Part shown: positions 5,501 to 41,756 of the stretch, piece by piece
Layout of the letters: each line of letters opens with the position of its first letter
Numbering within the stretch: the first letter of the stretch is position 1
From: Macrostomum hystrix
Taxonomy: Eukaryota > Animalia > Platyhelminthes
Direction: 5' to 3'
Assembly: GCA_950097015.1 (NCBI GenBank)
Contig: CATNEN010000025.1
Coordinates: forward strand, 7,192,001 to 7,256,000
Length of the DNA stretch: 64,000 nt
Program-made: the position numbers and the translations under genes
The notes under the pieces: model-generated
The model's database searches: none
Seen by the model: only the letters and a program-made list of their open reading frames with translations
Told to the model about the DNA's origin: nothing

Positions 5501-8500
5501 ACGGCAGCTCGGAGTCCAACTACTTTAAAGAAGAGAACAAGAAGATCAAAGACGCCATGGCGGAGCTGCGCAAGAAGATTTCGGAATTGCAGGCTCGGGT
5601 GAGATGGCTTTCTGGCCTAGGGTTATTAGACAAAACTGAGGAACCACCTGACAGTCACAGTCATTAGTGAAGTGACAAAGACCATAAACTAAGAGATAAG
5701 AAGTTATAATAATAAGGTGTAAATAATTAGCCAGGTGTAACTTATTAGTCACACCTGTGCACCCACCACCCCATACCTATCTAAATAAAACTACGGCCTC
5801 TGATTAGTCACACCTGTGCGCCCACCACCCCATATCTGACGATCACCACATCCAGAACGACACCCTGGAGCGCATGCTGGAGGACCTTCAGCGCGAAAAC
5901 GAGTCTGAGCGCCGTCGCCACGCCGAGGAGCAGGAGCGCCTCGAGAAGGAGCTCACCAGCACCGAGGCCGACCTGCGCCGTGTGCTCAACGAGCTGCAGG
6001 CCCTCCTGGACGCCAAGATCAGCCTGGAGCTGGAGATCTCCGCCTACAAGAAGCTGCTGGACGCCGAGGGAGTCGCCCTGGACAAGATCGACAGCATCAG
6101 CCGGCAGGGCAGCTTCAGGACCACCGAGAAGCCGACGGTGTCCATGGAGCAGCGGGTGGAGCGCCGCTCGGAGCAGCAGGAGAGTGAGTCTTTGTTCCTT
6201 CAGCTTGACTTGCTCTCTGTTGGCCGCCGCAATCTTTTTACTAGATGAAGAAATGACATTGCCATCTGAATACATCTTCAGCCCCAACCCGTGACCTCCC
6301 AGTCTAGCCGCTTCGCATTGTTTCGTTTGGCATTGACAAGCGGCTTCATGTAGTAAACACAATGGCTGTCCTCGCCTTGTTAATATAGCACACAATGCCT
6401 GTGTGTCTGGGGGATCTCAGTCTTAACAAGGAATTAGCTGGAACCATAGTCTCTCCCAATCAATTATCTAAACTTTTCTCTCTGCTCTTTCTAAGAGATC
6501 TGGCTGTCCCGACTACTTACCTTGGGCTGATCAATAATTCATTCTAGGCAAATACACTGCATATGCATATGCTACTTTATATTGAGGTATTTGACAAACA
6601 AACTCGACTAAGCAGAGAATTCTAGCAGACAAAAAACATTAGTTTGCGAATGCCATTTTCAGTGTCAAAATTCTAATTCCAATTGCTGCATTTGACTTGC
6701 TTTGGTAAGCAGAAAATTATTTTATTCTAATTTATAAAAGAAACTATATGGATATGCGGCACAGACTGCTGCACAGTAGTATGCACGGAATTCCAAGATT
6801 TTAATAAAAATGAGCTTAGAGACATAAAAGCCATAGAGAGAGGCTGGGATGTACGCAGATTGAATTGCTAGACGTGATTCGCCGCTAGGCATGCAGATTG
6901 CATTTTCATTGCACCTTTAGACATTTTCCGTTTGATTTGACTTCAACATTTTTTAGTTTATACTTTTTGGCCTGTTCTAACCACAGATGAATGTTGTTCA
7001 TTGCAATATATTGCTAATACTGATAAAATGTTTCGACTAAAATGTGTTTTAGTTTCAAAATTAGGTTTCGTACAATACATAGACTTTAGACTCGCGACCT
7101 ATTGCTTGCGTTTGTAAAAACTTTTATTATCTCGCATTAGACGACAATTAATTTCGGAACATTTTTCTACCTTTTTTTCACTCCAGTTTTCTGTGCTTAT
7201 TTAGAGTAGTATTTATTTAAACCCCTTTAGTTAGTTTTTTTACTAAAAAACTTGCGAAACGAATGAAAATGAGAAAATCTATTTCAAATGAAAACGGGTT
7301 CTGCAGCGGAATTACGAATATGTTGTATCATATGAGGCAAATCAGACGTTTTCAGTAGGCTTCAGTGAGCTGTGAGAATACGAGAAGGACTCCTATCGCT
7401 CTAACGCCTCACTCACTCCTTGAACCCAACTCACTCCCTGGAACACCCACTTTACGCCATACCTCAATCTCTGCCCCACCAACTCTATGCCCCACCTCAC
7501 TCCCTGCCATACTCACTCCCTGCCCCCTCGCTCCCTGTCCCCTCACTCCCTATCCCTTCACTTCCTGCCCCCTCGCTCCCTGTCCCCCTCACTCCCTGCC
7601 CCCCTCACTCCCTGCCCCCTCGCTCCCTGCCCCCCTCACTCCCTATCCCTTCACTTCCTGCCCCCTCGCTCCCTGTCCCCCTCACTCCCTATCCCTTCAC
7701 TCCCTGCCCCCCTCGCTCCCTGTCCCCCTCACTCCCTATCCCTTCACTCCATGCCCCCTCGCTCCCTGTCCCCCTCACTCCCTGCCCCCCTCACTCCCTG
7801 CCCCCCCGCTCCCTGTCCCCCTCACTCCCTGCCCCCCTCACTCCCTGCCCCCTCGCTCCCTGTCCCCCTCACTCCCTGCCCCCCTCACTCCCTGCCCCCT
7901 CGCTCCCTGTCCCCCTCACTCCCTATCCCTTCACTCCCTGCCCCCCTCACTCCCTGCCCCCTCGCTCCCTGTCCCCCTCACTCCCTGCCCCCCTCACTTC
8001 CTGCCCCCTCGCTCCCTGTCCCCCTCACTCCCTATCCCTTCACTTCCTGCCCCCTCGCTCCTTGTCCCCCTCACTCCCTGCCCCCCTCACTCCCTGCCCC
8101 CTCGCTCCCTGTCCCCCTCACTCCCTATCCCTTCACTTCCTGCCCCCTCGCTCCCTGTCCCCCTCATTCCCTATCCCTTCACTTCCTGCACCACCTCACA
8201 CCCCGCCCCACCCACTCCCTGCCCGACATCGCTATTGCTCACTCCAATCAATCTCGCCAAGATCATCTCCCGAAAGCAAAAAACTGGCCACACCGGTTTC
8301 TTGCAGTCACAACCCGCGGGTCAGGCTACCCCCAGCAGCAGCAGCAGATCGGCGGCAGCAAAAGCGTTGTCTACAGCAGCACCGCCAGCAGCGCCTACGA
8401 CGTACGTGGCGGTGCTGCGTCCGTTCAGCCGCCACCGTCGCTTTATAGACAGCAGCAGCAACAGCAGGGTTTCTCTTCAACCGGTGGCTCGTCCACCAAC

Positions 8501-17012: not shown

Positions 17013-18780
17013 TCTATATATATAAAAGTGAAAACTCTGTCTGTCTGTCTGTCTGTGTGTGTGTGTGTGTGTGTGCAACCTTTTGTCTTTATAGACGCCG
17101 AAACCGCTCAACCAAATCGCACGAAACTTTGCACATACCTAAAACCACCTACGCTGAGTGCAATAGGCTACTCAAATTCCCGAAAAATAATTTCCTTCCT
17201 GCTCAAAAGTGCAAAAAACTGCTCAAAAATCGTCAAAAAATCACTCAATTCGACATATCGTCGCCCCACTTTGTCAGATTTTCTCCAAATTTGATCCACT
17301 TACACTTTACATGTTTTCCAACAATGCTGTCAATTTTGAACATCTCTACTCAATCCAGAGCAAAGCCGCATCATCTCAAAGTGAGTCACTTTTTGTTTTC
17401 CGAGGACAGCCACCCCAACTCCCCTCCGCCACTCTGCGGGCCAAATTTTATTACAGCCACCCCCTCCCTTCCCCGGGCGCCGAAGCCTCAGACTGTACAT
17501 TGTATTTCAAGCCGTGAATGTACACAGCCCAAACCCCTAGACTGTCTACTGGCCCCCAAGCAGCACTGAGACTGAGTGCGGTGAGTGCGGTGGCGTCCCA
17601 GTGCGCAGGGCTCTCCGGTCGATATTTCTCTCCAGCCAGCCTGGGATAGAAGAAAGAGAGAGGCTGGCGATCAACTGATGGGTGGTGTCACTGCTGCTGT
17701 CTGGAGACTTTAGACAGACGCTGCCTGTGATTCCGCGTGGCACTCCTGCTGATGAGATTAATGCTTGCCTAAAATCATCTCACCTGTGGCCATCGGTTGT
17801 GAAGTTGCACCTACGAACAAACATGAGAGCTACAATTCAAGGAGACGAAACAGCTCATGAGTTCTCTGCCAATCTATTGCGAATCGGCAATGGTCTGCTG
17901 GAGATTAGCACCGAGGATGGGCAGTCATCGATCGCTACAATCGGAACCATTGTGCAGTCAGTGCAGGAGCTCAAGGCAAAAGTTTACCCGAACCTGATGG
18001 TTCGATATGCTGACGTTGACTGGCTGTCAGAGAGGGCAATTCTGTCCTAGAAATGATGCCGCCAACGAAATTAACTACCAACTGCGTTAGGAGTTGCCAG
18101 GTGCAGTTTTCACCTACAAGTCAATTGATACAACGTTGACTGATGACACCGCTGTGGAGTATCCTGTTGAGTTTCTGAACTCTCTAGATCCTCCTGGAAC
18201 TCCATCGCACAACTTGCAGCTGAAAGTTGGGGCACCAATTATGCTCCTCCGCAACCTGAATGCGCCAAGGCTGTGTAACGGCACCAGACTGATAGTCAGG
18301 CGGCTCTTCCCACACGTGATTGAGGCCACGATAATGACTGGATCTGGCAGAGGAGAGTCTGTGTTCGTTCCCCGGATTCCAATTATCCCCACGGACCTGC
18401 CATTTCAGTTCAAGCGACTGCAGTTCCCTGTGAGAGTGTGCTTTGCGATGACTATTAACAAGGCTCAGGGACAGTTGCTGAAGGTGGCTGGCATCAACCT
18501 GGAGACTCCTTGCTTCTCGCATGGGCAGCTTTATGTCGCCTGCTCCCGTGTTGGAACTCCAGCTGGCCTATTCATTTTCGCACCAAGGGGAAGAACGAAG
18601 AATGTGGTGTATCCCCAGGCCTTGAGGTGACTCGCAAGCAATTAATAGAAAAGTAGTCACGAATTGACCTTGACCTGTCTAACTCTGAACTCTGAAACAG
18701 TTTAATTTTGTTTCTTTGACATTGTTATTGTTATGCCATGGCTATTTTCCTTATGCATACGCGTGTACATGCATACTGTA
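17013..18780 (+). mobile_element. Internally deleted Helitron; 3' end not located
   Basis: A|TC start TCTATATATATAAAAGTG followed by a (TCTG)n(TG)n microsatellite, then a PIF1-family helicase C-terminal half. Confidence 0.7.
17668..18630 (+). pseudogene. Helitron Rep/Hel PIF1-like helicase fragment
   Basis: GDFRQTLPVIP, LCNGTRL and QFPVRVCFAMTINKAQGQ...HGQLYVACSRV motifs; frameshifts near 17690 and 18045 and an in-frame TAG near 18090. Confidence 0.85.
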
Positions 18781-20135
18781 TACAGAGGCAGATTTAGGGG
18801 GGGGGGGCGGAGGGGCAGTCGCCCCCCTAAATTTTAATCATGGGAATAAGATGCCCCCACCAGGGGCGCCAGTGCTGCGACTGTGCTGCGCCAGTGCTGC
18901 GACAGTTAAAAACATTTAAAGACAACAAGTAAGAAGGATTCAAAAGAGAAAAATTGGAAAGTATTGCTGTACACTTAAGATAATTGTTAACACTCTTTGG
19001 AAAGCCTATACTCAGAAATACATACATCTAATAAAGTAATCAACAAGAATAACTAAATATGCTACCTAGACTAACTAAATGTGCTACCCAGAAAAACTAA
19101 ATATGATAACTTACACCAACTAAATACTCTACCAAACTAAATACACAGCCAAGAAATTCTTTGAAATATATAAAATATATTTTCAGAGACAAATTCTAAG
19201 AAAATATTGAAATTACTTACACATTAAAATACCCTTGTAAACAACTTTTGTAGGCTATTAAAAATTAGAACTACCACAACTTTAGTTGCACATTAGGATT
19301 AAAACTTTACAAAGAAGTTAGGCCTACAACAACTTTGGTGACATCATATCCTTAGAATGATAATTAAAGAGAGAAGCATTACAAAATAACTATTTTGTTG
19401 ATTTATAATGAAGCACAATAGCCAGTCAATAGCTATGGTATAACTAACTCAAATTAACTGTTACTTTCTAATCAAGTATAAGTATATTATGAGAATTACA
19501 TATATTTTTTCATAAAAAACAACGGTCCGTGGAAATGCCGAAACTGACGAAACGGGCCGAAACAAACCGAAACGGACCGAAACGGACCGAAACGGACCGA
19601 AACGGACCGAAACAAACCGAAACGGACCGAAACGGACCGAAACAAACCGAAACGGACCGAAACGGACCGAAACAAACCGAAACGGACCAACTGGAACCTG
19701 AAAATGACAAAATTATTGATCGAGGGCAAACTATGGCTGATTAAAGCATCCGCCGTGCAAAGTGAAGCAACATCGGTGTGAGGGAGTGCGATCAATAGCT
19801 ACCGTACGTGCGATATTAGGGTGTGTGTTTTCTGTATTTTGTAATGCCGTTGCAGTTGCATATATCGAGTCGTCATTGCCTTTGTGCTTAGAATAGAATT
19901 TCAACCCTTGCTTATTGTATACTATTACGGGTCGTTTTAAAAGAAGCTTCAGTTTACATACCATACGCTTTTTCAAATCAATCGTGAGTTCTTTGTGCAA
20001 CACTTTGTTTAAACTAACTTACAGGAGCAGTTAACAAATTAAACTTACAGTATTCGATTTTGGACCGCCACGTGCAGACTATCAAATCACCAAGCCACAT
20101 TTCAATCAAGACGGTAAAGATCCTAGCAGTGTGCT

Positions 20136-23100
20136 ATGAGGATTCGGAGTCCTATGTACCCCTGCACTGGGTGTGGTCTTGAATGCGCTGACGATACAAT
20201 CTATTGTTGTGGATGCCAGTGTTGGAGCCATCGAACATGTCTTGCAATGAGCGAAGTGTTGTTTGCTAAGTGGGATTCCTCAAATGCAGACTTCCTTTGT
20301 CCCACGTGTGTCCACATCAACGATGGAGGATATGACATTCAGGGTGCTCTCTCTAGGTGAGTAAATGCTGTAGTGTGGTCTTCATATTAAATTCACAAAA
20401 TTCTATTGCTGCAGGGGCCTCGTGGCCTAATCACAGTGCTGTGCCCCACCAGATGTATATAAAATTATACATTTTGTCTATCTTAAGATTCTTCCCTTAT
20501 GACTTATGCTAGTCCCTAGGCCTATGACTTGCATCTTGATTAGAATCAAATTGATGTTCTTTGTGGTAGTGCTAGAGAGAGTAGACCTTACAAATGGTGG
20601 GCTTTAGAGTTCTGCCATAGCTATGGATATGTCTATGAGAAGTTACAGATATGGATTTTTTCATAAAAGATATGGATATGGATAGGCTATGGGAAAATTA
20701 AGAGGTTATGGATATAGATATGGATATGGGAAAATTTTAGTTATGGTGGAACTGAACTCTAGTGGGCTTCTTCATCAACAGTGATATAAAATGGTGGAAA
20801 GCATATTCTATAAAAATAGAGAATGGGGTAAAAGTCATCAACCAAACAAGAAATCAATGATTTTATATATTCAACCTTTTATTAAACTTTCAGTATGCTT
20901 CATATCAAAGTGAAGCTAACCCAAAGTTGCAGAAAGTTAATATTTTTCTTTTTGAAGAATATTGTTTTATCCAAAGCAGTTAATTAAGTTGAAAGAGGTA
21001 ATAGACCACTTTCTATCAAAACCAAGCAACAATTTTCATGCATTGTCAAGCTGAACAAAGAATCCGATGTTCTGTTTTTCATTTTGGCATAGTAAAGGCA
21101 TCATAGAACTTGAAATATCATAACAAATGAATAAAATAGTTAGGAAGAATCACATGAAAGATAAATATGACTTTCATTTCTCTTGAATGGTTTGGTTGAT
21201 GATGTTTTACCCTAAGGGCTTTTGATAAAAAAATGGGAAAAAAATATATACTGTACTTAGTAGTATAGTAGTAAGCAGTAAGTAGTTGCAAAGGAAAACT
21301 AAAACTTCAACTTCACTGTCATATGACATATTCAAGGAATTACTCATATCTGGATCATTTTTCTACATTCTCTTAATAGATTACATGCAATTCTAAATGT
21401 ATCATAAAGCTCAGATTGAGAACTGCTACAGTCTGCTATAGTGCATGATAGAAATCTTGATAAACTTGTATAAAGCATTTCCAGTGGATTTTGCAAGTCA
21501 GCTAGCTCAAATTCAACATAAAAGTTGCTACTTTCTTTTGTTTCAACAATTTCAGGCTACAGACTTCAGTGGCTATGTCTGCTAGTGAGCGCGAACAACT
21601 TCTGCTGGCGACATACTTTGTAGAACCACAACTTCAAGAGGTCATCTTTGGAAATGCTGGCACCGATAAGACTGGTACTGATGATATTGCCAAGAAGATT
21701 TTGCTGCTGTTCCAGCCATGTGTACTCAATTTGTACCACCCTGCAGCTGTTGCTGGGGATGGCAACTGTTTTTATCGTGCAGCCTCCCTGGCTCTCTATG
21801 GCACACAGGAGCACCATCTGTACCTTCGTTTGCGAATTGGGCTAGAGTTGATTGACAACAGATCATTCTATGATTTGGAAGCAGCAAACTTTACTGATCT
21901 AATAAATGACTGTCGGATCTATACACCACCATTTCTAGATGTAATGATGAGTGCTGTTACTCCTGGCTCCTATGCAGAGATGATTCACTTCTTTGCACTG
22001 AGTGCTGCCATTGGTAAAGCGATTCAGTCATATCATCCACCAAATGCTCTTATTTCTTGTGACCAGCATCCATACACACGCCTTGTGTGTGGTCGTGGTG
22101 TCCGCCGTCCATGCAGTCCGGTAATCACATTAATGTGGTCTCACTTTTCGCACGTTCCAGCCAAGGCAACTGCACTCGTTGCGAACCATGTCATTCCACT
22201 CATACGAATAGTCGATGCAACACATGAGTCACCAACAAGTGTTGAGATGGATGAGGAGGGGGCAGAGGACTATAGTGAGAACTCACGAGTTGACGACTCG
22301 AGGAATGATGGCGAAAAGGATGGTGAAGTTGGGAGTGACGAAGGTGAGTCGCATGCGAGGAGGGCTGAAGAGAAGAATGCGCAGGAAAGTGAAGAGGCAG
22401 CGAATGACAATGGTGCTGGAGTGGGGGACAAGGACAAGACGCGTTCGCAGAAGTCAAAGAAGAAGAAAGGCACAAAGAGAGAGAATGAAGCTGCAGGCGA
22501 TGATGCTGGGGTGGAGGAGAGTGGCGCTTCAAGTTCGCAGAAGTCAAAGAAGAAGAAAGGCACAAAGAGAGAGAATGAAGCTGCAGGCGATGATGCTGGG
22601 GTGGAGGAGAGTGGCGCTTCAAGTTCGCAGAAGTCAAAGAAGAAGAAAGGCACAAAGAGAGAGAATGAAGCTGCAGGCGATGATGCTGGGGTGGAGGAGA
22701 ATGGCACTTCAAGTTCGCAGAAGTCAAAAAGAAAGAAGTACAAGGACACAAGAAGAAGAGCGGACGAATCAATGAGCACCGATGATGAGAAGCAATCCAA
22801 TTCTGACTCAGATCCAAAGAATGCAAAGAGGAAGAATGATTACATCGCCGACGAGTCAAACCTGTTTACTGATTATGGAACTGATTCTAGTCTACCAGGA
22901 GGAAAATTCATGTCTGGCCAAAAAGTTTATGAGGTTTTGACTACAACCGGGATAGAGAATGCCCTAAAATCAGTTCCGACTGGAAAAAAGGACAATGTAT
23001 ACTTCGTGGTTGACAACACTGACAATATACAGCGTCGACTGGGTGGCAAGAAAAGCCTTTTTTGGGATGACTGTGGAGCGTGGGTCTCATCAAATTCGCC

Positions 23101-24691
23101 TACTATTAGAGTTCCATATTTATGTGCAAGTAATCGTCTTGGATCTCGATTGCATCGTAAAGAAGAAAAATACTGCACTGAATTTCAGTGCAGTAACAAA
23201 CGCTACTATGTTCCACTATCTCCACAGCCATTGAAGGAAGACGTTGTTACTTTTGTGCACCATTATTCAAGTTTGAAATTTGGCTCACAATCTGCTTCGA
23301 GCTATCGTCGCCGGATTACTTGGATTGAGAGTGCAGCACACTCAATTGCCATTTTTGAATACGCAGGTACATTCCCAGGACACAAGCAGCATGGGAACGA
23401 TAGTGCAGAAGATTCACACTTCATTCGAACACCAGAAGAAACTATACAGAAAATGAAGGAGATGCTGAAGTCGCTTCCACCTAGAGAAGTTTATGCTAAG
23501 TTAGTGAAGGACAATTTGGAAGAGAGTGAGAAGTCTCCTCGTAATCTTCAACAAGTAAGAGATGCAAATCGTAAAAATGCTTCGGGGCACAGGGTGCCAT
23601 TCGCAAACCCTGCAGACGAGTGGTTGGCTGTCGTTGAAATGCTTCAAATGAATGAATTTGTACGACATGTAATTCACCCACATGGAAGGCCGCCTTGCGC
23701 TGTTCTGTACACAGATAAGCAACTGCGAGACGTTAAAGAATTCTGCTGCGGTTCCAACGCAAGTGTACTGTCATTCGACAAAACATACAATCTGGGCTCT
23801 GTTTTTGTTACCCCTAGTTCGTATCAGAACTTGGCTTTGTATCGCAAATCAACAGGAGATACCCCCATTTTTATGGGGCCAATCTTTTTACATGGCAATT
23901 CTGATGCCACGACATATAACTACTTCTTCAGCCATTTATCTTTGATGCTGGAACATTCACCTCAAAAGAAGATTATTCTTGGATCGGATGCTGAGCTGGG
24001 GATGCGTAAGGCAATGATGCATTCCTTTCCATACGCGTTTACAGTGGCATGTACAAAGCATTTGAAGGACAATGCCAAAAGGCAGCTATCAGACACATGT
24101 GGTGTTGATAAGTACGAACGAAAGAAAATTATTTCACAAATTTTCGGTACACATGGACTTGCCAACTCTAATACAGTGACTGTTTTTGATGCTGCTGTGG
24201 CACAGCTTATACATGAAATGCGAAGTGCAATCCCAGCATTTGCGAAATACTGTGCCTCACACGTGCTACCACTGTTGCGAGAAAGCATTGTCTGCGAGCG
24301 TCACTTGTGGACGACCAACAATGCTGAGTCGCTGAATCACGTTTTGAAGATGAAAATAAGTTGGACACCAAGAAACCTTCCTGACTTGATTTTTCGCTTG
24401 GAGGAGCTATCGAGGCAGCAGCATTTAGAAGCAGAAAGAGCTCTCATCGGCTTTGGCGAGTTTCGACTGTCCTGTATGTATGTACATCATCAAATCACTC
24501 TCGATGCTTGGAAGAAAATGTCAAAAAAACAAAGAGATGCAGCTTTCCAAAAGTGCTTTCGAATGATTAAGGATGAAGGAGTGTTCACATCTACCAATGG
24601 CAGGTTCAAAACTATGAGGAAACCATCTGCTGGTAAGAAGCCCCACCAGAAGCGACGACAGAAGGCAGAGCGAGCGACTCAGTTTCGATAA
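20136..24691 (+). CDS. MULE transposase with N-terminal PHD finger and OTU-like cysteine protease; exons 20136(or 20154)-20356, 21556-24691
   Basis: Exon 1 CTGC...CCGC...HRTC...CPTC (C4HC3). The phase-2 join AG|G runs in frame into the 1040-aa ORF, which has GDGNCFYRA...NHVIPL (OTU) and SFDKTY / GSDAE / CTKH / NAESLN (MULE D-D-CxxH-E). Confidence 0.8.
22444..22735 (+). repeat. 90-bp coding repeat, 3 copies (30 aa) inside the transposase linker
   Basis: SQKSKKKKGTKRENEAAGDDAGVEESGASS; AAGTTCGCAG recurs at 22531, 22621 and 22711. Confidence 0.9.
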
Positions 24692-26440
24692 ATGTGTCAG
24701 CTAATTTGACAATGACAGGAATAAGTGCAGCGCTGCATTTCTAGCTATATATTTGTGTGCTTAGTTCGAATATTCGTTTTTATCCCGATAGAAATCCCAT
24801 GCACATGCCAGTGCCAGTGACCATCACAGTCTAAACCATATGACCATTTTTATAGACAGCGACGGTAATCCTACGACTGACTATCTAGTGTGCTTTGTAT
24901 TTCCAATTATTGTTCATTTACTTACCCCTGCCTAACCATATTTCTACTGCACCAGCCACTTTTTGTTTACCATCTCATATGCAACTGTCTGACTGTTACA
25001 GTAAGTACATATAGGAATTTTTAAGTGTGCAAATAATTTTTTTGCCAGCTGTGTTTCCTACTATACATGTACTACTTACTAGCTGTATGATGCTGTCGTG
25101 GAAAGCTGTTTGCATTTGCATTTTATTTTATCCTGCTTATTATGAATGTGATGTACTTCACATAAGGACCATTAGTCTTCAACTGCAACCTCAACTTCTA
25201 TTTCATGCTAAACAACGTCTACCAGCCCACCAGTGTCAACATGTTTTTTTGCTAAAGATGAATTTCAAAGCATTGGGCCAACATGATTCCAAACCACCCT
25301 TGCATTCATGCACTGTATCTTAAGTCCATCAATTCAGATTCCCTTGCTGAGTGAACGGAGTCAAGTATAGTAAAACGCTAATTGATTACTTTACTGAGTA
25401 AGAAGTAAAGATTTTAGCTGCTGCAATTTAAGAGAGAGAGAGAGAGAGAGAAGTGCACAAGCACCGGAGCCTATCGGTTCTGGGTGGGCTATTCCCCTGG
25501 GTGGCTGCCACATTGAGAAGCACCTGACATTCTCTCAATAGCTTCATGGAAATTAATTTCTTCCTTTGGGATAAGTTTCCCAACCTACCTTACTTTCGTT
25601 CTGATTATTTTTGTATTGCTATCTGCTGCTTTTAGTTGTCGATTTTGCCTGACATTTCCTGCTGAAGAAACGCGTGAAAGATTTTTTACCATCTTTTGGA
25701 TCGTCAGTTTTGCTTTATATACTGTAAGTCTTGCTGTCGGGTCGCACACTTTATTTTGCACCGCTGGCTTCCATGTGTACATTTTGGCGCTCACTGCATT
25801 TTTACATTATTCTTGCTTATAAGTTTTGCTTTTTCTGCTGTCGTTCTGCTGCTTTTAATCAATTTTTGCTATTCTCACTTGACTTGCCGATTTGTGCCGC
25901 TTTTAAATTGTGCCAGTAACGTTTTGTCAGCCCAACGGAATTGACTTTATAGATTCGTACTACCTGTCAGTGTCTTCACCTCGCTTTTATCAACCACAAC
26001 CAAATTTATCAACCACATTGACTTTTATGTCTATGAAAGATGCTTTTTGCAAAAAAGGTTTTTGTTTGCCTTTTTCTTACCATCTCTTTGAGTCTCTTTG
26101 ACTTGCTGAAATTAAACTGCTCTTAACTAAACCGTTTTTCGAAAAAAACTTTCAATAATTTTATCTTACATTTTTTCGTTCCAAATTATTTTTAAAACGT
26201 ATATCGGAGCGCAATGAGTAAAATCGATTAACTACAGTATAAACATTCTATTACATGTACTTCAGCATCGTTGAAATTCTAGTGGAGTCGACCTTCGGCG
26301 GTATATAAATTTTCATCAATTCAGATACATGTATAGTTACTGCAAGCCTTGTGCCTTCGTGTTTTGAATTCGATTATGCTGTAAGATAGGCTTGTGCGGC
26401 CAATTCGCTACAGAGTATTAGCAATTCAATGCGCGCAATG

Positions 26441-27085
26441 TTAATGTACTACGAGTACAACAATGTTTGGCTCTAGTTCGGATTTGATAGTTTCAAGAAG
26501 GTCATCGGCAAGAGAAGAGAAAGCGTTTGGGTAGTAGTCGACCAGACAGCGATCATTGACAAAGGATGTGGAGGTAAGACCCGAGGTGTTGATGGGCACT
26601 AGACCAAGTGGGCTTGGAGCGGCAGAAACAGCTTCCCCACTCACTACTCTTTCAAGATTGCCGGTACCGGTGCCAGAAGTTGAAGGCGAGGTCGGAGGAG
26701 TCGCAAATTCAGGTCTCGCGCCGTCGGCTCCAACGGTACCGTCAGCCGAAGCGATGTCGGTGTCTATCTCGATCGGGGAGTCGTCTCGGAGGGTCGTCTC
26801 GGCGGTCTCAGCAGACTCGGCCGGGTGCTCAACGATCTTCTCGTGACCGGAGTCGCTTGCACAGTTGGAATCGCTGGGACGGCCGGGGATCGAGGATCGC
26901 CCTGGTACGGCCTTAGGCTTCTTGGCGGCCGCTGCTGCTGCCGACTCTAGACTGGCACGGGAGTTCGACGGCCGCTGGCGCTTGGATGAAGTGGCTGGAG
27001 GGCCGGGGATGAGCTCTGCACCTGGCTTCTTCGACGCCGATGCCGCTGAAGACCTGGCCGGAGGTCGACTGCCGTTGCTGCTCAT
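26441..27085 (-). CDS. Possible second, convergent ORF of the MULE (214 aa, S/A/P-rich)
   Basis: ATG-initiated, GC-rich ORF in AT-rich surroundings; no recognisable domain. Confidence 0.35.
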   Translation of the reverse strand: MSSNGSRPPARSSAASASKKPGAELIPGPPATSSKRQRPSNSRASLESAAAAAAKKPKAVPGRSSIPGRPSDSNCASDSGHEKIVEHPAESAETAETTLRDDSPIEIDTDIASADGTVGADGARPEFATPPTSPSTSGTGTGNLERVVSGEAVSAAPSPLGLVPINTSGLTSTSFVNDRCLVDYYPNAFSSLADDLLETIKSELEPNIVVLVVH

Positions 27086-27847
27086 GCCCGAGCGAGATTT
27101 GCTAATGTGGAGACTTTCTATTCTATGCTTGCTATGTAAATATGTTATAATAATAAAATAAATAAATGTAAAAGTTGCTATTTACCGTCAAAATAGACAG
27201 AAAGACTAAAGTCTAAGTGCAATGAAAGCTATTTGGTGTCTAAAGTTCACTATGACTAGCTAAGCTAAGCTAAGGGACACAGTGAGCCTGCTAGCGCAGG
27301 GAGGGGGAGGTGCCAACCGACAGACAACAGGTGAGTACACGCCTAGCCGGGGGGAACCGGGCGCTCACTCACAAGCTGAGAGACGGAAGGCAGATGGAAA
27401 GGATCTAGGCAGGTGAGAAAGGGGCGATCGGCACTGCCAGTGGAAAGGGTAGTAAAGCTATAGCTGGCGTGCGCACGTGGCGGCAAAGCGGAGAAAGCGA
27501 AATAGGCAAAAGGCACGGCCGGGGCGCGAAAGCTGGACTGGACAAGGGAGGCAAGCTTATACCAACAAGCTTAGCTTATAGCAAGCTTATACCAAAGGGA
27601 TGAAGCGATGAATTTTCTTGCGATAGAATTGGCTCGTATATATAGCACGGGGGAGTGAGGTTGCTGCACAAAGATGTTACGAGGTTTAAACGTAAAACCC
27701 GGAAATTTACACCGGAAAATAGTTACATGAATAGCTAGAAGAAATACCTATATCATATGCTTTATGCTGAAAATGTACACCAATTTCCGCCTAATTGATG
27801 CACATTTTCAGCATTAAGCATAGAGAATACTTTCATAAGAAACCCCC

Positions 27848-27958
27848 CAGGAGTCAGCGGAATGGGCAGAATTGCCTCCCCGCTGGCTGTGGGACGATGA
27901 CGCCAAACGTGCTGCGCCAGTGAGCCCACTGCCCTCCTGCAATTATTGTTATTATTCG
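27848..27958 (+). mobile_element. 3' fragment of SINE family B inside the MULE
   Basis: CAGGAGTCAGCGGAATGGGCAGAATTGCCTCCCCGCTGGCTG...TGCAATTATTGTTATT matches the 3' end of 10826-11203. Confidence 0.7.
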
Positions 27959-28784
27959 CCCCCCCGACTTTGTTAATCAGGCTTCAGTTCCCAGTCCCCA
28001 ATCAGGCGCGAGTTTGAAAGGGAAAAAATCCGACATCAACATCAGGTACACGTTACATATATGCATATAGATTCTGAAGTTAAGTCTCCCGATTCGTCCA
28101 TTTCGGTTGGTTTCGGTCCGTTTCGGTCCGCTTTGGTTGGTTTCGGTTCGTTTCGGTCCGTTTCGGTTCGTTTCGGTCCGTTTCGGTTCGTTTCGGTCCG
28201 TTTCGGTCCGTTTCGGCCCGTTTCGGTCCGTTTCGGTCCGTTTCGTCCGTTTCGGCATTTCCACGGACCCTAAAAAACAATAGACCAAGCTGTATGCTGA
28301 TCTTATGACTGCTTGGTTGCTATTTTGCTTATATATAATTTTTTTATGAATGAAGCTTTTGAAAATCAGAATGCATCTTTTTGAAATTCATACCTTCAAG
28401 CATGTTTCTAAAAGCATAGAAATTTCATAATCCTAATGCACAATAAATGAATCACACAATATTATTAAACTGTGTTGCAATTATTAGTGCAATGAATCAA
28501 AATTCTATCAATAACACAATTGACAACCATTCTTCTGTACATTAATCTAGGTATTGAACTCAACTTTGTATCAATTGAAATACCACCTTTAGAATTTATT
28601 ATTTTGATATGGCCAAAAGAGTAAATGAGTTAAAAAATTCTTTCAATTTTTTTGAAAGAAGCTTTTTTTCTATAACTTAATTTGTAGTGCCAGATTATAA
28701 AATACATTAACCACGTTCAACACGCCGATCATTTGTCTTAAACAAATATATATATATGAGTACAAATAGAGACTTAGTTAAGGT

Positions 28785-30642: not shown

Positions 30643-41756
<11,114 letters not shown>

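What the first reader, a model, noticed from the sequence alone, without database searches (positions are those of the whole stretch)
20136..24691. Intact Mutator transposase fused to a PHD finger and an OTU-like protease
Seen: an in-frame spliced PHD exon, an OTU-like domain with Asp/Cys (GDGNC) and His (NHVIPL), a K/E-rich repeat linker, and a DDE core with all catalytic positions, with no stop over 3.1 kb. Knowledge: PHD fingers read histone H3 tails, OTU domains are deubiquitinases, some MULEs carry Ulp1/OTU proteases, and vertnin is a transposon-related OTU-like protein. Inference: a single polypeptide that reads chromatin, removes ubiquitin marks or protects itself from degradation, and integrates; a possible self-contained anti-silencing or targeting system.
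Basis: partly seen in the sequence, partly recalled or inferred. Interest (0 to 1): 0.78.

Follow-up and report, generated by a model that had tools for sequence, protein, structure and literature searches.

The report
Mutator transposon with PHD and OTU
This is an intact, very young 8.7-kb Mutator-type jumping gene whose transposase also carries a histone-reader-type zinc finger and a ubiquitin-protease-type domain. Protease-carrying transposons are known, but I found no description of this combination, and its role is untested.

Summary
Window 19523-28270 is a complete MULE-superfamily DNA transposon. It has roughly 170-bp inverted ends built from 10-bp tandem repeats and a 10-bp target-site duplication. 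The genome holds four copies, 99.9% identical, each in different flanks.

Its two-exon gene runs 20136-20356 and 21556-24691, about 1118 codons. In order it encodes:
- a Pygopus-like C4HC3 PHD finger;
- an OTU domain with D64/C67/H207 conserved;
- an acidic/basic linker of 90-bp repeats carrying KKKK motifs;
- a MULE/IS256-type DDE core (D737/D807/E920 plus CxxH).

The window protein scores below every Pfam cut-off. Relatives at 24-44% identity score above them, and profile and fold searches hit OTU deubiquitinases, PHD fingers and the ISCth4 Mutator-family transposase.

The splice is supported by homology only. It rebuilds a motif that is continuous in intron-less relatives. One of these is a second PHD-like-OTU-MULE ORF in the same genome at about 25% identity.

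The "anti-silencing or targeting system" reading is untested. Ulp1(+PHD) MULEs, OTU-bearing Ginger1 elements and OTU-bearing Helitrons are published. I found no paper on OTU in a MULE, and Repbase could not be checked. This scan already followed up another copy of the same element (s1-268096) and reached the same reading. Verdict: a new variant of a known kind, of moderate interest.

The parts
19513..19522 (.). Left copy of the 10-bp target-site duplication (TAAAAAACAA)
   Evidence: The same 10-mer lies at 28271-28280. The other three copies have different duplications of 10, 10 and 9 bp.
19523..19690 (+). Left terminal inverted repeat: C + GGTCCGTGGAAATGCC, then about 15 tandem 10-bp units (CCGAAACGGA)
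   Evidence: Tandem array at 19538-19688. It aligns to the reverse complement of the right end over 167/177 bp at about 90%. Homology among the four copies starts here. The number of units varies between copies.
20136..20356 (+). Exon 1: start codon, PHD finger (ligands C10 to C58, 20163-20309) and the start of a conserved 'AL.R|L' motif
   Evidence: BLASTP against the N-termini of P0002 (1e-13) and P0005 (3e-10). Identical in all four copies.
20357..21555 (+). Intron (GTGAGT ... pyrimidine tract ... CAG), 1199 bp, phase 2
   Evidence: The splice sites are unchanged in all four copies. The junction is inferred from homology. No RNA evidence.
21556..24691 (+). Exon 2: OTU, repeat linker, putative DNA-binding region, DDE core, basic tail, stop
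21737..22207 (+). OTU-like cysteine protease domain (ORF residues about 57-213; D64 at 21758, C67 at 21767, H207 at 22187)
22443..22733 (+). Linker made of a 90-bp tandem repeat (3.2 units) encoding acidic stretches and KKKK motifs that resemble nuclear-localisation signals
   Evidence: The C32 and C1 copies have one extra unit, in frame.
22886..23668 (+). Conserved beta-rich N-terminal part of the transposase (ORF residues 440-700), probably the DNA-binding domain
   Evidence: Invariant columns in A2. Beta-strands in the model. Language-model look-alikes are FAR1-, GCM- and FLYWCH-type clusters, scores 0.86-0.93; this is a lead only.
23756..24358 (+). RNase H-like DDE catalytic core with an alpha-helical insertion (D737 at 23777, D807 at 23987, C828/H831 at 24050-24061, E920 at 24326)
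26441..27085 (-). ORF2 (214 aa) inside the element. Its last ~47 residues resemble the stretch upstream of the 2OG-Fe(II) oxygenase domain in 872-891-aa genes elsewhere in the genome. Probably a captured gene fragment.
   Evidence: It is 100% identical in three copies and carries a 2-bp deletion in the C32 copy.
28093..28270 (-). Right terminal inverted repeat (about 16 tandem 10-bp units, the terminal GGCATTTCCACGGACC, then C)
28271..28280 (.). Right copy of the target-site duplication (TAAAAAACAA)

Best explanation
Window 19523-28270 is an autonomous cut-and-paste DNA transposon of the Mutator (MULE) superfamily that moved very recently.

Shown: the gene and its product. Its single two-exon gene encodes about 1118 residues. 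In order these are a Pygopus-like PHD finger, an OTU-fold cysteine protease with Cys and His intact, a repeat linker with KKKK motifs that resemble nuclear-localisation signals, a beta-rich region, and an IS256/MULE-type DDE core.

Shown: the element. It has inverted ends of about 170 bp made of roughly 15 copies of a 10-bp unit. It makes 9-10-bp target-site duplications. Four copies 99.9% identical lie at unrelated sites. The PHD-OTU-MULE domain order is conserved in relatives down to about 25% identity.

Inferred: the transposase binds the reiterated 10-mers through its N-terminal beta-rich domain. It then excises and integrates with a 9-10-bp stagger.

Inferred, moderate confidence (about 0.6): the OTU domain is an active isopeptidase for ubiquitin or a ubiquitin-like modifier.

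Inferred, low confidence: OTU acts in trans near the transposition complex. It might stabilise the transposase or adjust ubiquitin-dependent repair or chromatin marks. The PHD finger would tether the complex to a histone H3 tail and bias where this happens.
For: Element boundaries, inverted ends and target-site duplications.
Four copies 99.88-99.94% identical in different flanks, with the transposase frame open in three of them.
Splice geometry, and a junction that rebuilds a motif continuous in P0003, P0005 and the C35 paralogue.
PHD.
OTU.
DDE.
OTU and transposase diverge to a similar degree from relatives (38% against 40% with P0001; 24-44% against 32-40%), so both appear to be under constraint.
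Background on protease- and deubiquitinase-bearing transposons: PMC2836005, PMC9741609.
Against: The window protein itself falls below every Pfam gathering score.
The OTU model has low confidence (pLDDT 55).
There is no transcript evidence for the splice, and an ATG at 21575 could give a PHD-less product.
No biochemical evidence exists for any activity. According to PMC9741609, transposon OTU domains have never been assayed.
No acidic residue follows the His at +2. The third catalytic residue would have to be D64 or another residue.
Only four copies exist and no non-autonomous derivatives were found, so current mobility is inferred, not shown.
Confidence: 0.85

Rival explanations
1. The element belongs to a family already catalogued in Repbase or Dfam, for example the Rehavkus branch of MuDR. 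That branch is defined by a PHD finger, 9-bp duplications and tandem repeats in its inverted ends. On this reading nothing about the architecture is new.
For: Rehavkus is described with a PHD finger, 9-bp TSD, long TIRs and subterminal or terminal tandem repeats (PMC6446971; bioRxiv 10.1101/2024.12.02.626372). This element has a PHD finger, 9-10-bp TSDs and ends made of tandem 10-mers.
Against: The Rehavkus catalytic motifs visible in the supplement of PMC6446971 differ from those here. Around the first D they read D-[AS]-T-G-S against D-K-T-Y-N. Around the E they read NNAIERYF against NNAESLNH. The motifs here look like canonical MULE/IS256. None of the papers I read mentions an OTU domain in Rehavkus or any MULE.
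Confidence: 0.3
2. The OTU domain is a cis-acting processing protease, as in some RNA-virus polyproteins. It would cut the primary product to release the transposase from the PHD-OTU part, rather than act on host ubiquitin conjugates.
For: OTU-fold proteases of viruses do both jobs (general knowledge). Many of the best structural matches are viral OTUs. A long disordered linker separates OTU from the transposase.
Against: No Gly-Gly site is conserved across relatives in or next to the linker. LPGGK and RLGGK in the window are not kept in P0003-P0005.
Confidence: 0.12
3. The PHD exon is not joined to the long ORF. The transposase is translated from the ATG at 21575 as an OTU-MULE protein, and 20136-20356 is a separate short ORF or a leader.
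For: No RNA data are available. The long ORF has its own ATG three codons in. Some relatives (P0001, P0013) lack a called PHD.
Against: The exon has consensus splice sites and the correct phase. The junction rebuilds the conserved '...AL.RL...' motif seen in continuous ORFs of P0002-P0005 and of the C35 paralogue. The exon is intact in all four copies. P0001 comes from a 3.3-kb contig that may simply lack the exon.
Confidence: 0.08
4. The OTU and PHD domains are non-catalytic binding modules, a ubiquitin-binding pseudo-protease and a generic zinc finger, kept only for protein-protein contacts.
For: No acidic residue lies at His+2. The window scores below the Pfam cut-offs.
Against: Cys, His and the DGNC Asp are invariant at 24-44% identity. 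They are also kept in the paralogue at about 26% identity.
Confidence: 0.1

Closest known systems
Ulp1-protease MULEs (KI-MULE/Kaonashi type in plants; Ulp1-bearing MuDR in Hydra and lancelet)
   Same: A Mutator-superfamily transposase fused to a papain-fold cysteine protease of the ubiquitin-like-modifier system, sometimes together with a PHD finger (PMC2836005). A Ulp1+PHD MULE is also noted in this genome (scan note s1-344280).
   Different: Here the protease is OTU (clan CA, family C85-like), not Ulp1 (C48). No Ulp1 hit appears in Pfam. In the scan's note on this genome's Ulp1-PHD MULE that module forms the tail of the transposase; here PHD-OTU lies N-terminal of it.
Ginger1 DNA transposons
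   Same: Their transposases carry an OTU or Ulp1 domain, and one family has Ulp1+PHD. They occur in invertebrates (PMC2836005).
   Different: Ginger1 has a Gypsy-integrase-like DDE with YPYY, H2C2 and GPY/F motifs, and its protease is C-terminal. Here the core is MULE/IS256-type, the target-site duplication is 9-10 bp, and the protease is N-terminal.
Helitron/Helentron elements with OTU or VTD deubiquitinase domains
   Same: Transposon-encoded deubiquitinase-type domains with conserved active sites. The VTD domains were shown to cleave ubiquitin chains (PMC9741609).
   Different: Those are rolling-circle RepHel elements, not DDE cut-and-paste elements. No PHD finger is reported for them.
Rehavkus group of MuDR (Repbase)
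   Same: PHD finger, about 9-bp TSD, long inverted ends carrying tandem repeats, elements of 5-18 kb, invertebrate hosts.
   Different: No OTU is reported. The catalytic-motif wording differs.
IS256-family transposase ISCth4 (PDB 6XG8/6XGW/6XGX)
   Same: It is the best structural match (E 5e-7) and the only PDB sequence match at E<0.1 (E 0.005) for the catalytic core. The second D, the C/H position and the E-S-x-N motif align.
   Different: It is a bacterial protein of about 400 aa, without PHD, OTU or the beta-rich N-terminal region.

Membership tests
Mutator/MULE superfamily (Pfam PF10551 MULE, PF00872 Transposase_mut) | Transposase homologous to the MULE/IS256 DDE core | tested here: met
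   The window scores 16.6 bits against a cut-off of 27.6 for MULE, and 19 against 21 for Transposase_mut. Its relatives at 31-40% identity all match MULE, and P0006, P0010, P0013, P0016 and P0041 pass the cut-off. The family profile hits 6XG8 at E 0.005. The model's top five structural hits are ISCth4.
Mutator/MULE superfamily | D, D, E triad plus a C/D-x2-H motif after the second D (signature recalled from Yuan and Wessler 2011) | tested here: met
   D737, D807, E920, C828 and H831 are invariant in nine sequences.
Mutator/MULE superfamily | Target-site duplication of about 8-11 bp and long terminal inverted repeats | tested here: met
   TSDs of 10, 10, 10 and 9 bp in four copies. TIRs of 167/177 bp at about 90%.
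Rehavkus branch of MuDR | PHD finger in the transposase, tandem repeats in or next to the inverted ends, 9-bp TSD | tested here: met
   PHD in exon 1. Ends made of 10-bp tandem repeats. TSD of 9-10 bp.
Rehavkus branch of MuDR | Transposase sequence groups with Rehavkus transposases | tested here: inconclusive
   Only short motifs could be compared by eye with the published alignment, and they differ. No Repbase sequences were available for a search or a tree.
OTU cysteine proteases (PF02338) | Sequence match to the family | tested here: met
   The window scores 16.7 against 23.3. P0002-P0004, P0013, P0016, P0021 and P0041 score 24.9-30.4 bits. The profile hits OTUD1 at 6.9e-6 and OTUD5 at 3.4e-5 over the whole domain.
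OTU cysteine proteases | Catalytic Cys in a D-G-N-C loop and catalytic His | tested here: met
   D64, C67 and H207 are invariant. They are also present in the C35 paralogue.
OTU cysteine proteases | OTU fold | tested here: met
   The 31 Foldseek hits with E<=0.001 that are listed are all OTU-fold proteases. OTUD1 gives E 2.3e-6 and TMt 0.62. The model is weak (pLDDT 55).
OTU cysteine proteases | Isopeptidase activity on ubiquitin or a ubiquitin-like modifier | not testable with these tools
   This needs an enzyme assay.
PHD finger (PF00628) | C4HC3 ligand spacing and sequence match | tested here: met
   The spacing is canonical. Pygopus PHD matches at E 3.8e-5 over residues 5-66. The Pfam score is 16 against 24, and P0005 scores 23.6.
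PHD finger | Binding of a histone H3 tail | not testable with these tools
   The Trp two residues before the His (C-W-S-H) is kept in P0002, P0004 and P0005 but not in the C35 paralogue. I take it to be a cage residue from memory only.
Ulp1-type (KI) MULEs | Ulp1/C48 protease domain | tested here: not met
   No PF02902 hit in the window protein or in relatives.
Ginger1 | Gypsy-integrase-like DDE with a GPY/F motif (PMC2836005) | tested here: not met
   The core is MULE/IS256-type and the TSD is 9-10 bp.

The most novel reading that the evidence does not exclude
PHD-OTU is a chromatin-directed deubiquitinase module that the transposon brings along. The PHD finger would dock on an H3 tail. The OTU domain would strip a ubiquitin mark, or rescue the transposase or a repair factor from degradation, at the site of transposition. 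That would make this clade an animal cut-and-paste element with a self-encoded enzymatic counter to host control, and a young, apparently intact copy would be available to test it.
Probability: 0.15. Interest if true: 0.75.

Novelty: new variant of a known kind. Interest (0 to 1): 0.42.

Why it matters
Transposons of several unrelated classes have picked up proteases of the ubiquitin or SUMO system: MULE, Ginger1, Helitron and, according to this scan's notes, pogo. In the papers I read, what these domains do for the element remains a matter of suggestion. Transposon OTU domains have not been assayed (PMC9741609).

This element is a clean test case. It has an intact gene, defined ends, four near-identical copies and conserved catalytic residues. 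It also has an N-terminal PHD-OTU module that can be deleted or mutated without touching the DDE core.

The finding adds OTU to the proteases seen with Mutator transposases. The fusion is also old: the same domain order is found at about 25% identity within one genome.

Tried and rejected
1. The word-index protein search on the OTU part alone (residues 1-225) returned nothing. I read this as a limit of the index, because P0001-P0005 clearly share the domain.
2. The repeat finder did not report the inverted ends. They were found through the copy boundaries and the tandem-repeat finder.
The ends and duplications of relatives in other organisms therefore could not be examined.
4. I did not run the large HMMER search of protein representatives. 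The size and host range of the family therefore remain unknown.
5. I considered a vertnin connection and dropped it for lack of evidence.
6. I looked for a conserved Gly-Gly self-cleavage site and found none.
7. ORF2 as a second transposition protein is rejected. Its only recognisable similarity is to the N-terminal piece of a multi-copy 2OG-Fe(II) oxygenase gene, and no oxygenase domain lies in the element.
8. The sigma-70 promoter scan does not apply to a eukaryotic element.
10. The contig is not human: the assembly is 220 Mb in 42 contigs.
11. I could not verify this, because the relatives I retrieved carry no organism names except one MULE-only clam protein.
Full report
WHAT IS THERE

It spans 21569-24691, 1040 codons without a stop. 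Upstream, a 74-codon ORF starts at ATG 20136, and an in-frame TAG lies four codons before that ATG.

Exon 1 ends at 20356 and is followed by GTGAGT. A pyrimidine tract and CAG end at 21555. The split codon AG|G reads Arg and continues exactly in the frame of the long ORF. The gene model is therefore 20136-20356 plus 21556-24691, about 1118 codons. The two exons were always used separately, by reference.

THE ELEMENT AROUND THE GENE

A search of the window's own assembly (220 Mb, 42 contigs, not human) found four copies. These are the window copy and one each on contigs C38, C32 and C1. Homology begins at window 19523 and ends at 28270.

Both ends begin with GGTCCGTGGAAATGCC, followed by about 15 tandem copies of a 10-bp unit. 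The two ends align in inverted orientation over 167/177 bp at about 90%.

Each copy sits in unrelated flanking DNA and is bracketed by its own direct duplication. The window copy has TAAAAAACAA. The other three have 10, 10 and 9 bp.

The copies are 99.88-99.94% identical. The differences are:
- repeat-number changes in the ends;
- one extra in-frame 90-bp linker unit in C32 and C1;
- a 1-bp deletion that breaks the transposase frame in C38;
- a 2-bp deletion in ORF2 of C32.

The transposase frame is open in three of the four copies. I found no shorter derivatives. Apart from one very distant paralogue, described below, the genome holds no diverged relatives.

This is the signature of a cut-and-paste element that moved very recently and has a short history in this genome.

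THE DOMAINS

The window protein alone scores below every Pfam cut-off:

| Pfam family | Window score (bits) | Cut-off (bits) |
|---|---|---|
| Transposase_mut | 19 | 21 |
| MULE | 16.6 | 27.6 |
| OTU | 16.7 | 23.3 |
| PHD | 16 | 24 |

The assignments hold on other evidence.

PHD
- Exon 1 has the canonical C4HC3 spacing.
- On its own it matches Pygopus PHD fingers in the PDB at E 3.8e-5 across residues 5-66.

OTU
- Relatives at 24-44% identity pass the Pfam cut-off: P0002-P0004, P0013, P0016, P0021 and P0041 score 24.9-30.4 bits.
- A profile of six family members hits OTUD1 (6.9e-6), OTUD5 (3.4e-5, whole domain) and OTUD7B.
- D64, C67 (in GDGNC) and H207 (in NH) are invariant.
- The AlphaFold model is weak (pLDDT 55, from only six sequences). 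Even so, all 31 Foldseek hits at E<=0.001 are OTU-fold proteases, cellular and viral.

Transposase
- All nine aligned relatives match Pfam MULE, several above the cut-off.
- D737, D807, E920 and the C828-x2-H831 motif are invariant.
- The family profile's only PDB match at E<0.1 is the 'Mutator family transposase' ISCth4 (E 0.005). The second D, the C/H position and the E-S-x-N motif align.
- The model (pLDDT 76) has ISCth4 as its top five structural matches (E 5e-7). P-element and Hermes transposases follow.

Other regions
- ORF residues 440-700 form a conserved, beta-rich block. Its language-model look-alikes are FAR1-, GCM- and FLYWCH-type clusters. That fits the WRKY-GCM1-type DNA-binding domains described for MULE transposases (abstract of PMC1702500), but it is only a lead.
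- The linker is a 90-bp repeat encoding acidic runs and KKKK motifs that resemble nuclear-localisation signals.

IS THE PHD REALLY PART OF THE PROTEIN?

No transcript data were available, so this rests on homology.

- P0002, P0004 and P0005 are single called proteins from other sources. They carry a PHD finger, a short conserved motif ('..AL.RL..'), a second motif ('E.LL..TY.V') and then OTU.
- In the window the first motif is split by the intron. Exon 1 ends in ...GALS-R and exon 2 begins L-QTSV...EREQLLLATYFV, so splicing rebuilds it.
- The same genome also holds a very distant paralogue at G000:C35:893676-896318, an 880-aa ORF with 23-26% identity. A PHD-like C4HC3 finger, OTU and MULE lie in one uninterrupted ORF there.

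The three-part order is therefore ancestral to a clade. It is not an accident of this locus.

FUNCTION

Shown:
- an intact transposon gene with conserved catalytic positions in both enzymatic domains;
- OTU and transposase diverged from relatives to a similar degree (38% against 40% with P0001). This argues that OTU is under constraint comparable to the DDE core.

Inferred:
- The transposase recognises the reiterated 10-mers and cuts with a 9-10-bp stagger.
- OTU is an active isopeptidase. I put this at about 0.6.

What OTU acts on is open. Published suggestions for transposon proteases are modulation of ubiquitin- or SUMO-dependent repair (PMC2836005) and protection of transposition proteins from the proteasome (PMC9741609). 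A cis-processing role is a rival, but I found no conserved Gly-Gly site. A histone-tail tether for the PHD finger is plausible, given its resemblance to Pygopus/DIDO/MLL-type fingers, but it is untested.

COMPARISON WITH WHAT IS KNOWN

Published cases:
- MULEs with Ulp1 proteases, in plants, Hydra and lancelet.
- Ginger1 transposases with OTU or Ulp1, one of them with PHD.
- Helitrons with OTU (all three in PMC2836005).
- Helentrons with VTD and OTU deubiquitinase domains (PMC9741609).

Rehavkus, now placed within MuDR (PMC4455052), is described with a PHD finger, 9-bp duplications and tandem repeats in long inverted ends. This element shares those traits. However, its catalytic motifs read like canonical MULE/IS256 rather than the Rehavkus motifs visible in the published alignment. 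I could not run a proper comparison without Repbase.

Seven full-text searches turned up no paper describing an OTU domain in a Mutator-superfamily transposase.

This scan had already followed up another copy of this same element (note s1-268096) and reached the same reading. My tests agree with that note. Its remark about amphioxus could not be checked.

LIMITS

- The large representative search was not run.
- Repbase and Dfam were not available.
- There are no RNA or biochemical data.

VERDICT

This is a new variant of a known kind, a protease-bearing MULE with OTU in place of Ulp1 and an N-terminal PHD. Interest is moderate, mainly as a tractable system for asking what transposon-encoded deubiquitinase-type domains do.

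Noticed in passing
window 26441-27085 (minus strand): ORF2 inside the element (214 aa, no Pfam hit). Its last ~47 residues are 51% identical to the stretch just upstream of a PF13532 2OG-Fe(II) oxygenase domain in 872-891-aa single-ORF genes elsewhere in the genome (11 weakly matching loci). The element contains no oxygenase domain, so this looks like a captured gene fragment, as in Pack-MULEs.
   Followed up: partly
L020:2707-5382 and L021:2001-4619 (G000:C1:17586706-17589381 and C1:22499000-22501618): A multi-copy family of intron-less genes of about 880 aa, with an AlkB-like 2OG-Fe(II) oxygenase domain (105 and 101 bits) and a long low-complexity tail. It could belong to another mobile element.
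   Followed up: no
window 18094-18884: The tail of a Pif1-type helicase ORF (Pif1 2B domain, 70 bits). It is followed by a ~280-bp segment present in at least 40 copies at 98-100% identity across the genome. This looks like the 3' end of a young, abundant Helitron-like element lying about 640 bp from the MULE insertion.
   Followed up: partly
L027:4677-7319 (G000:C35:893676-896318): A second PHD-like-OTU-MULE gene, only 23-26% identical to the window's, as one 880-aa ORF without an intron. The match stops before the catalytic E, so it may be truncated or spliced. Its first 427 bp recur 100% identical on contig C30.
   Followed up: partly
window 30900-31200 (query 6201-6501): A ~300-bp repeat present in many copies genome-wide at 90-94% identity, probably a SINE- or MITE-like element.
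   Followed up: no
window 19538-19688 and 28096-28255, compared with the other three copies: The number of 10-bp units in the inverted ends differs between copies that are otherwise 99.9% identical (indels of 10, 20 and 30 bp). The terminal arrays therefore change faster than the rest of the element.
   Followed up: partly
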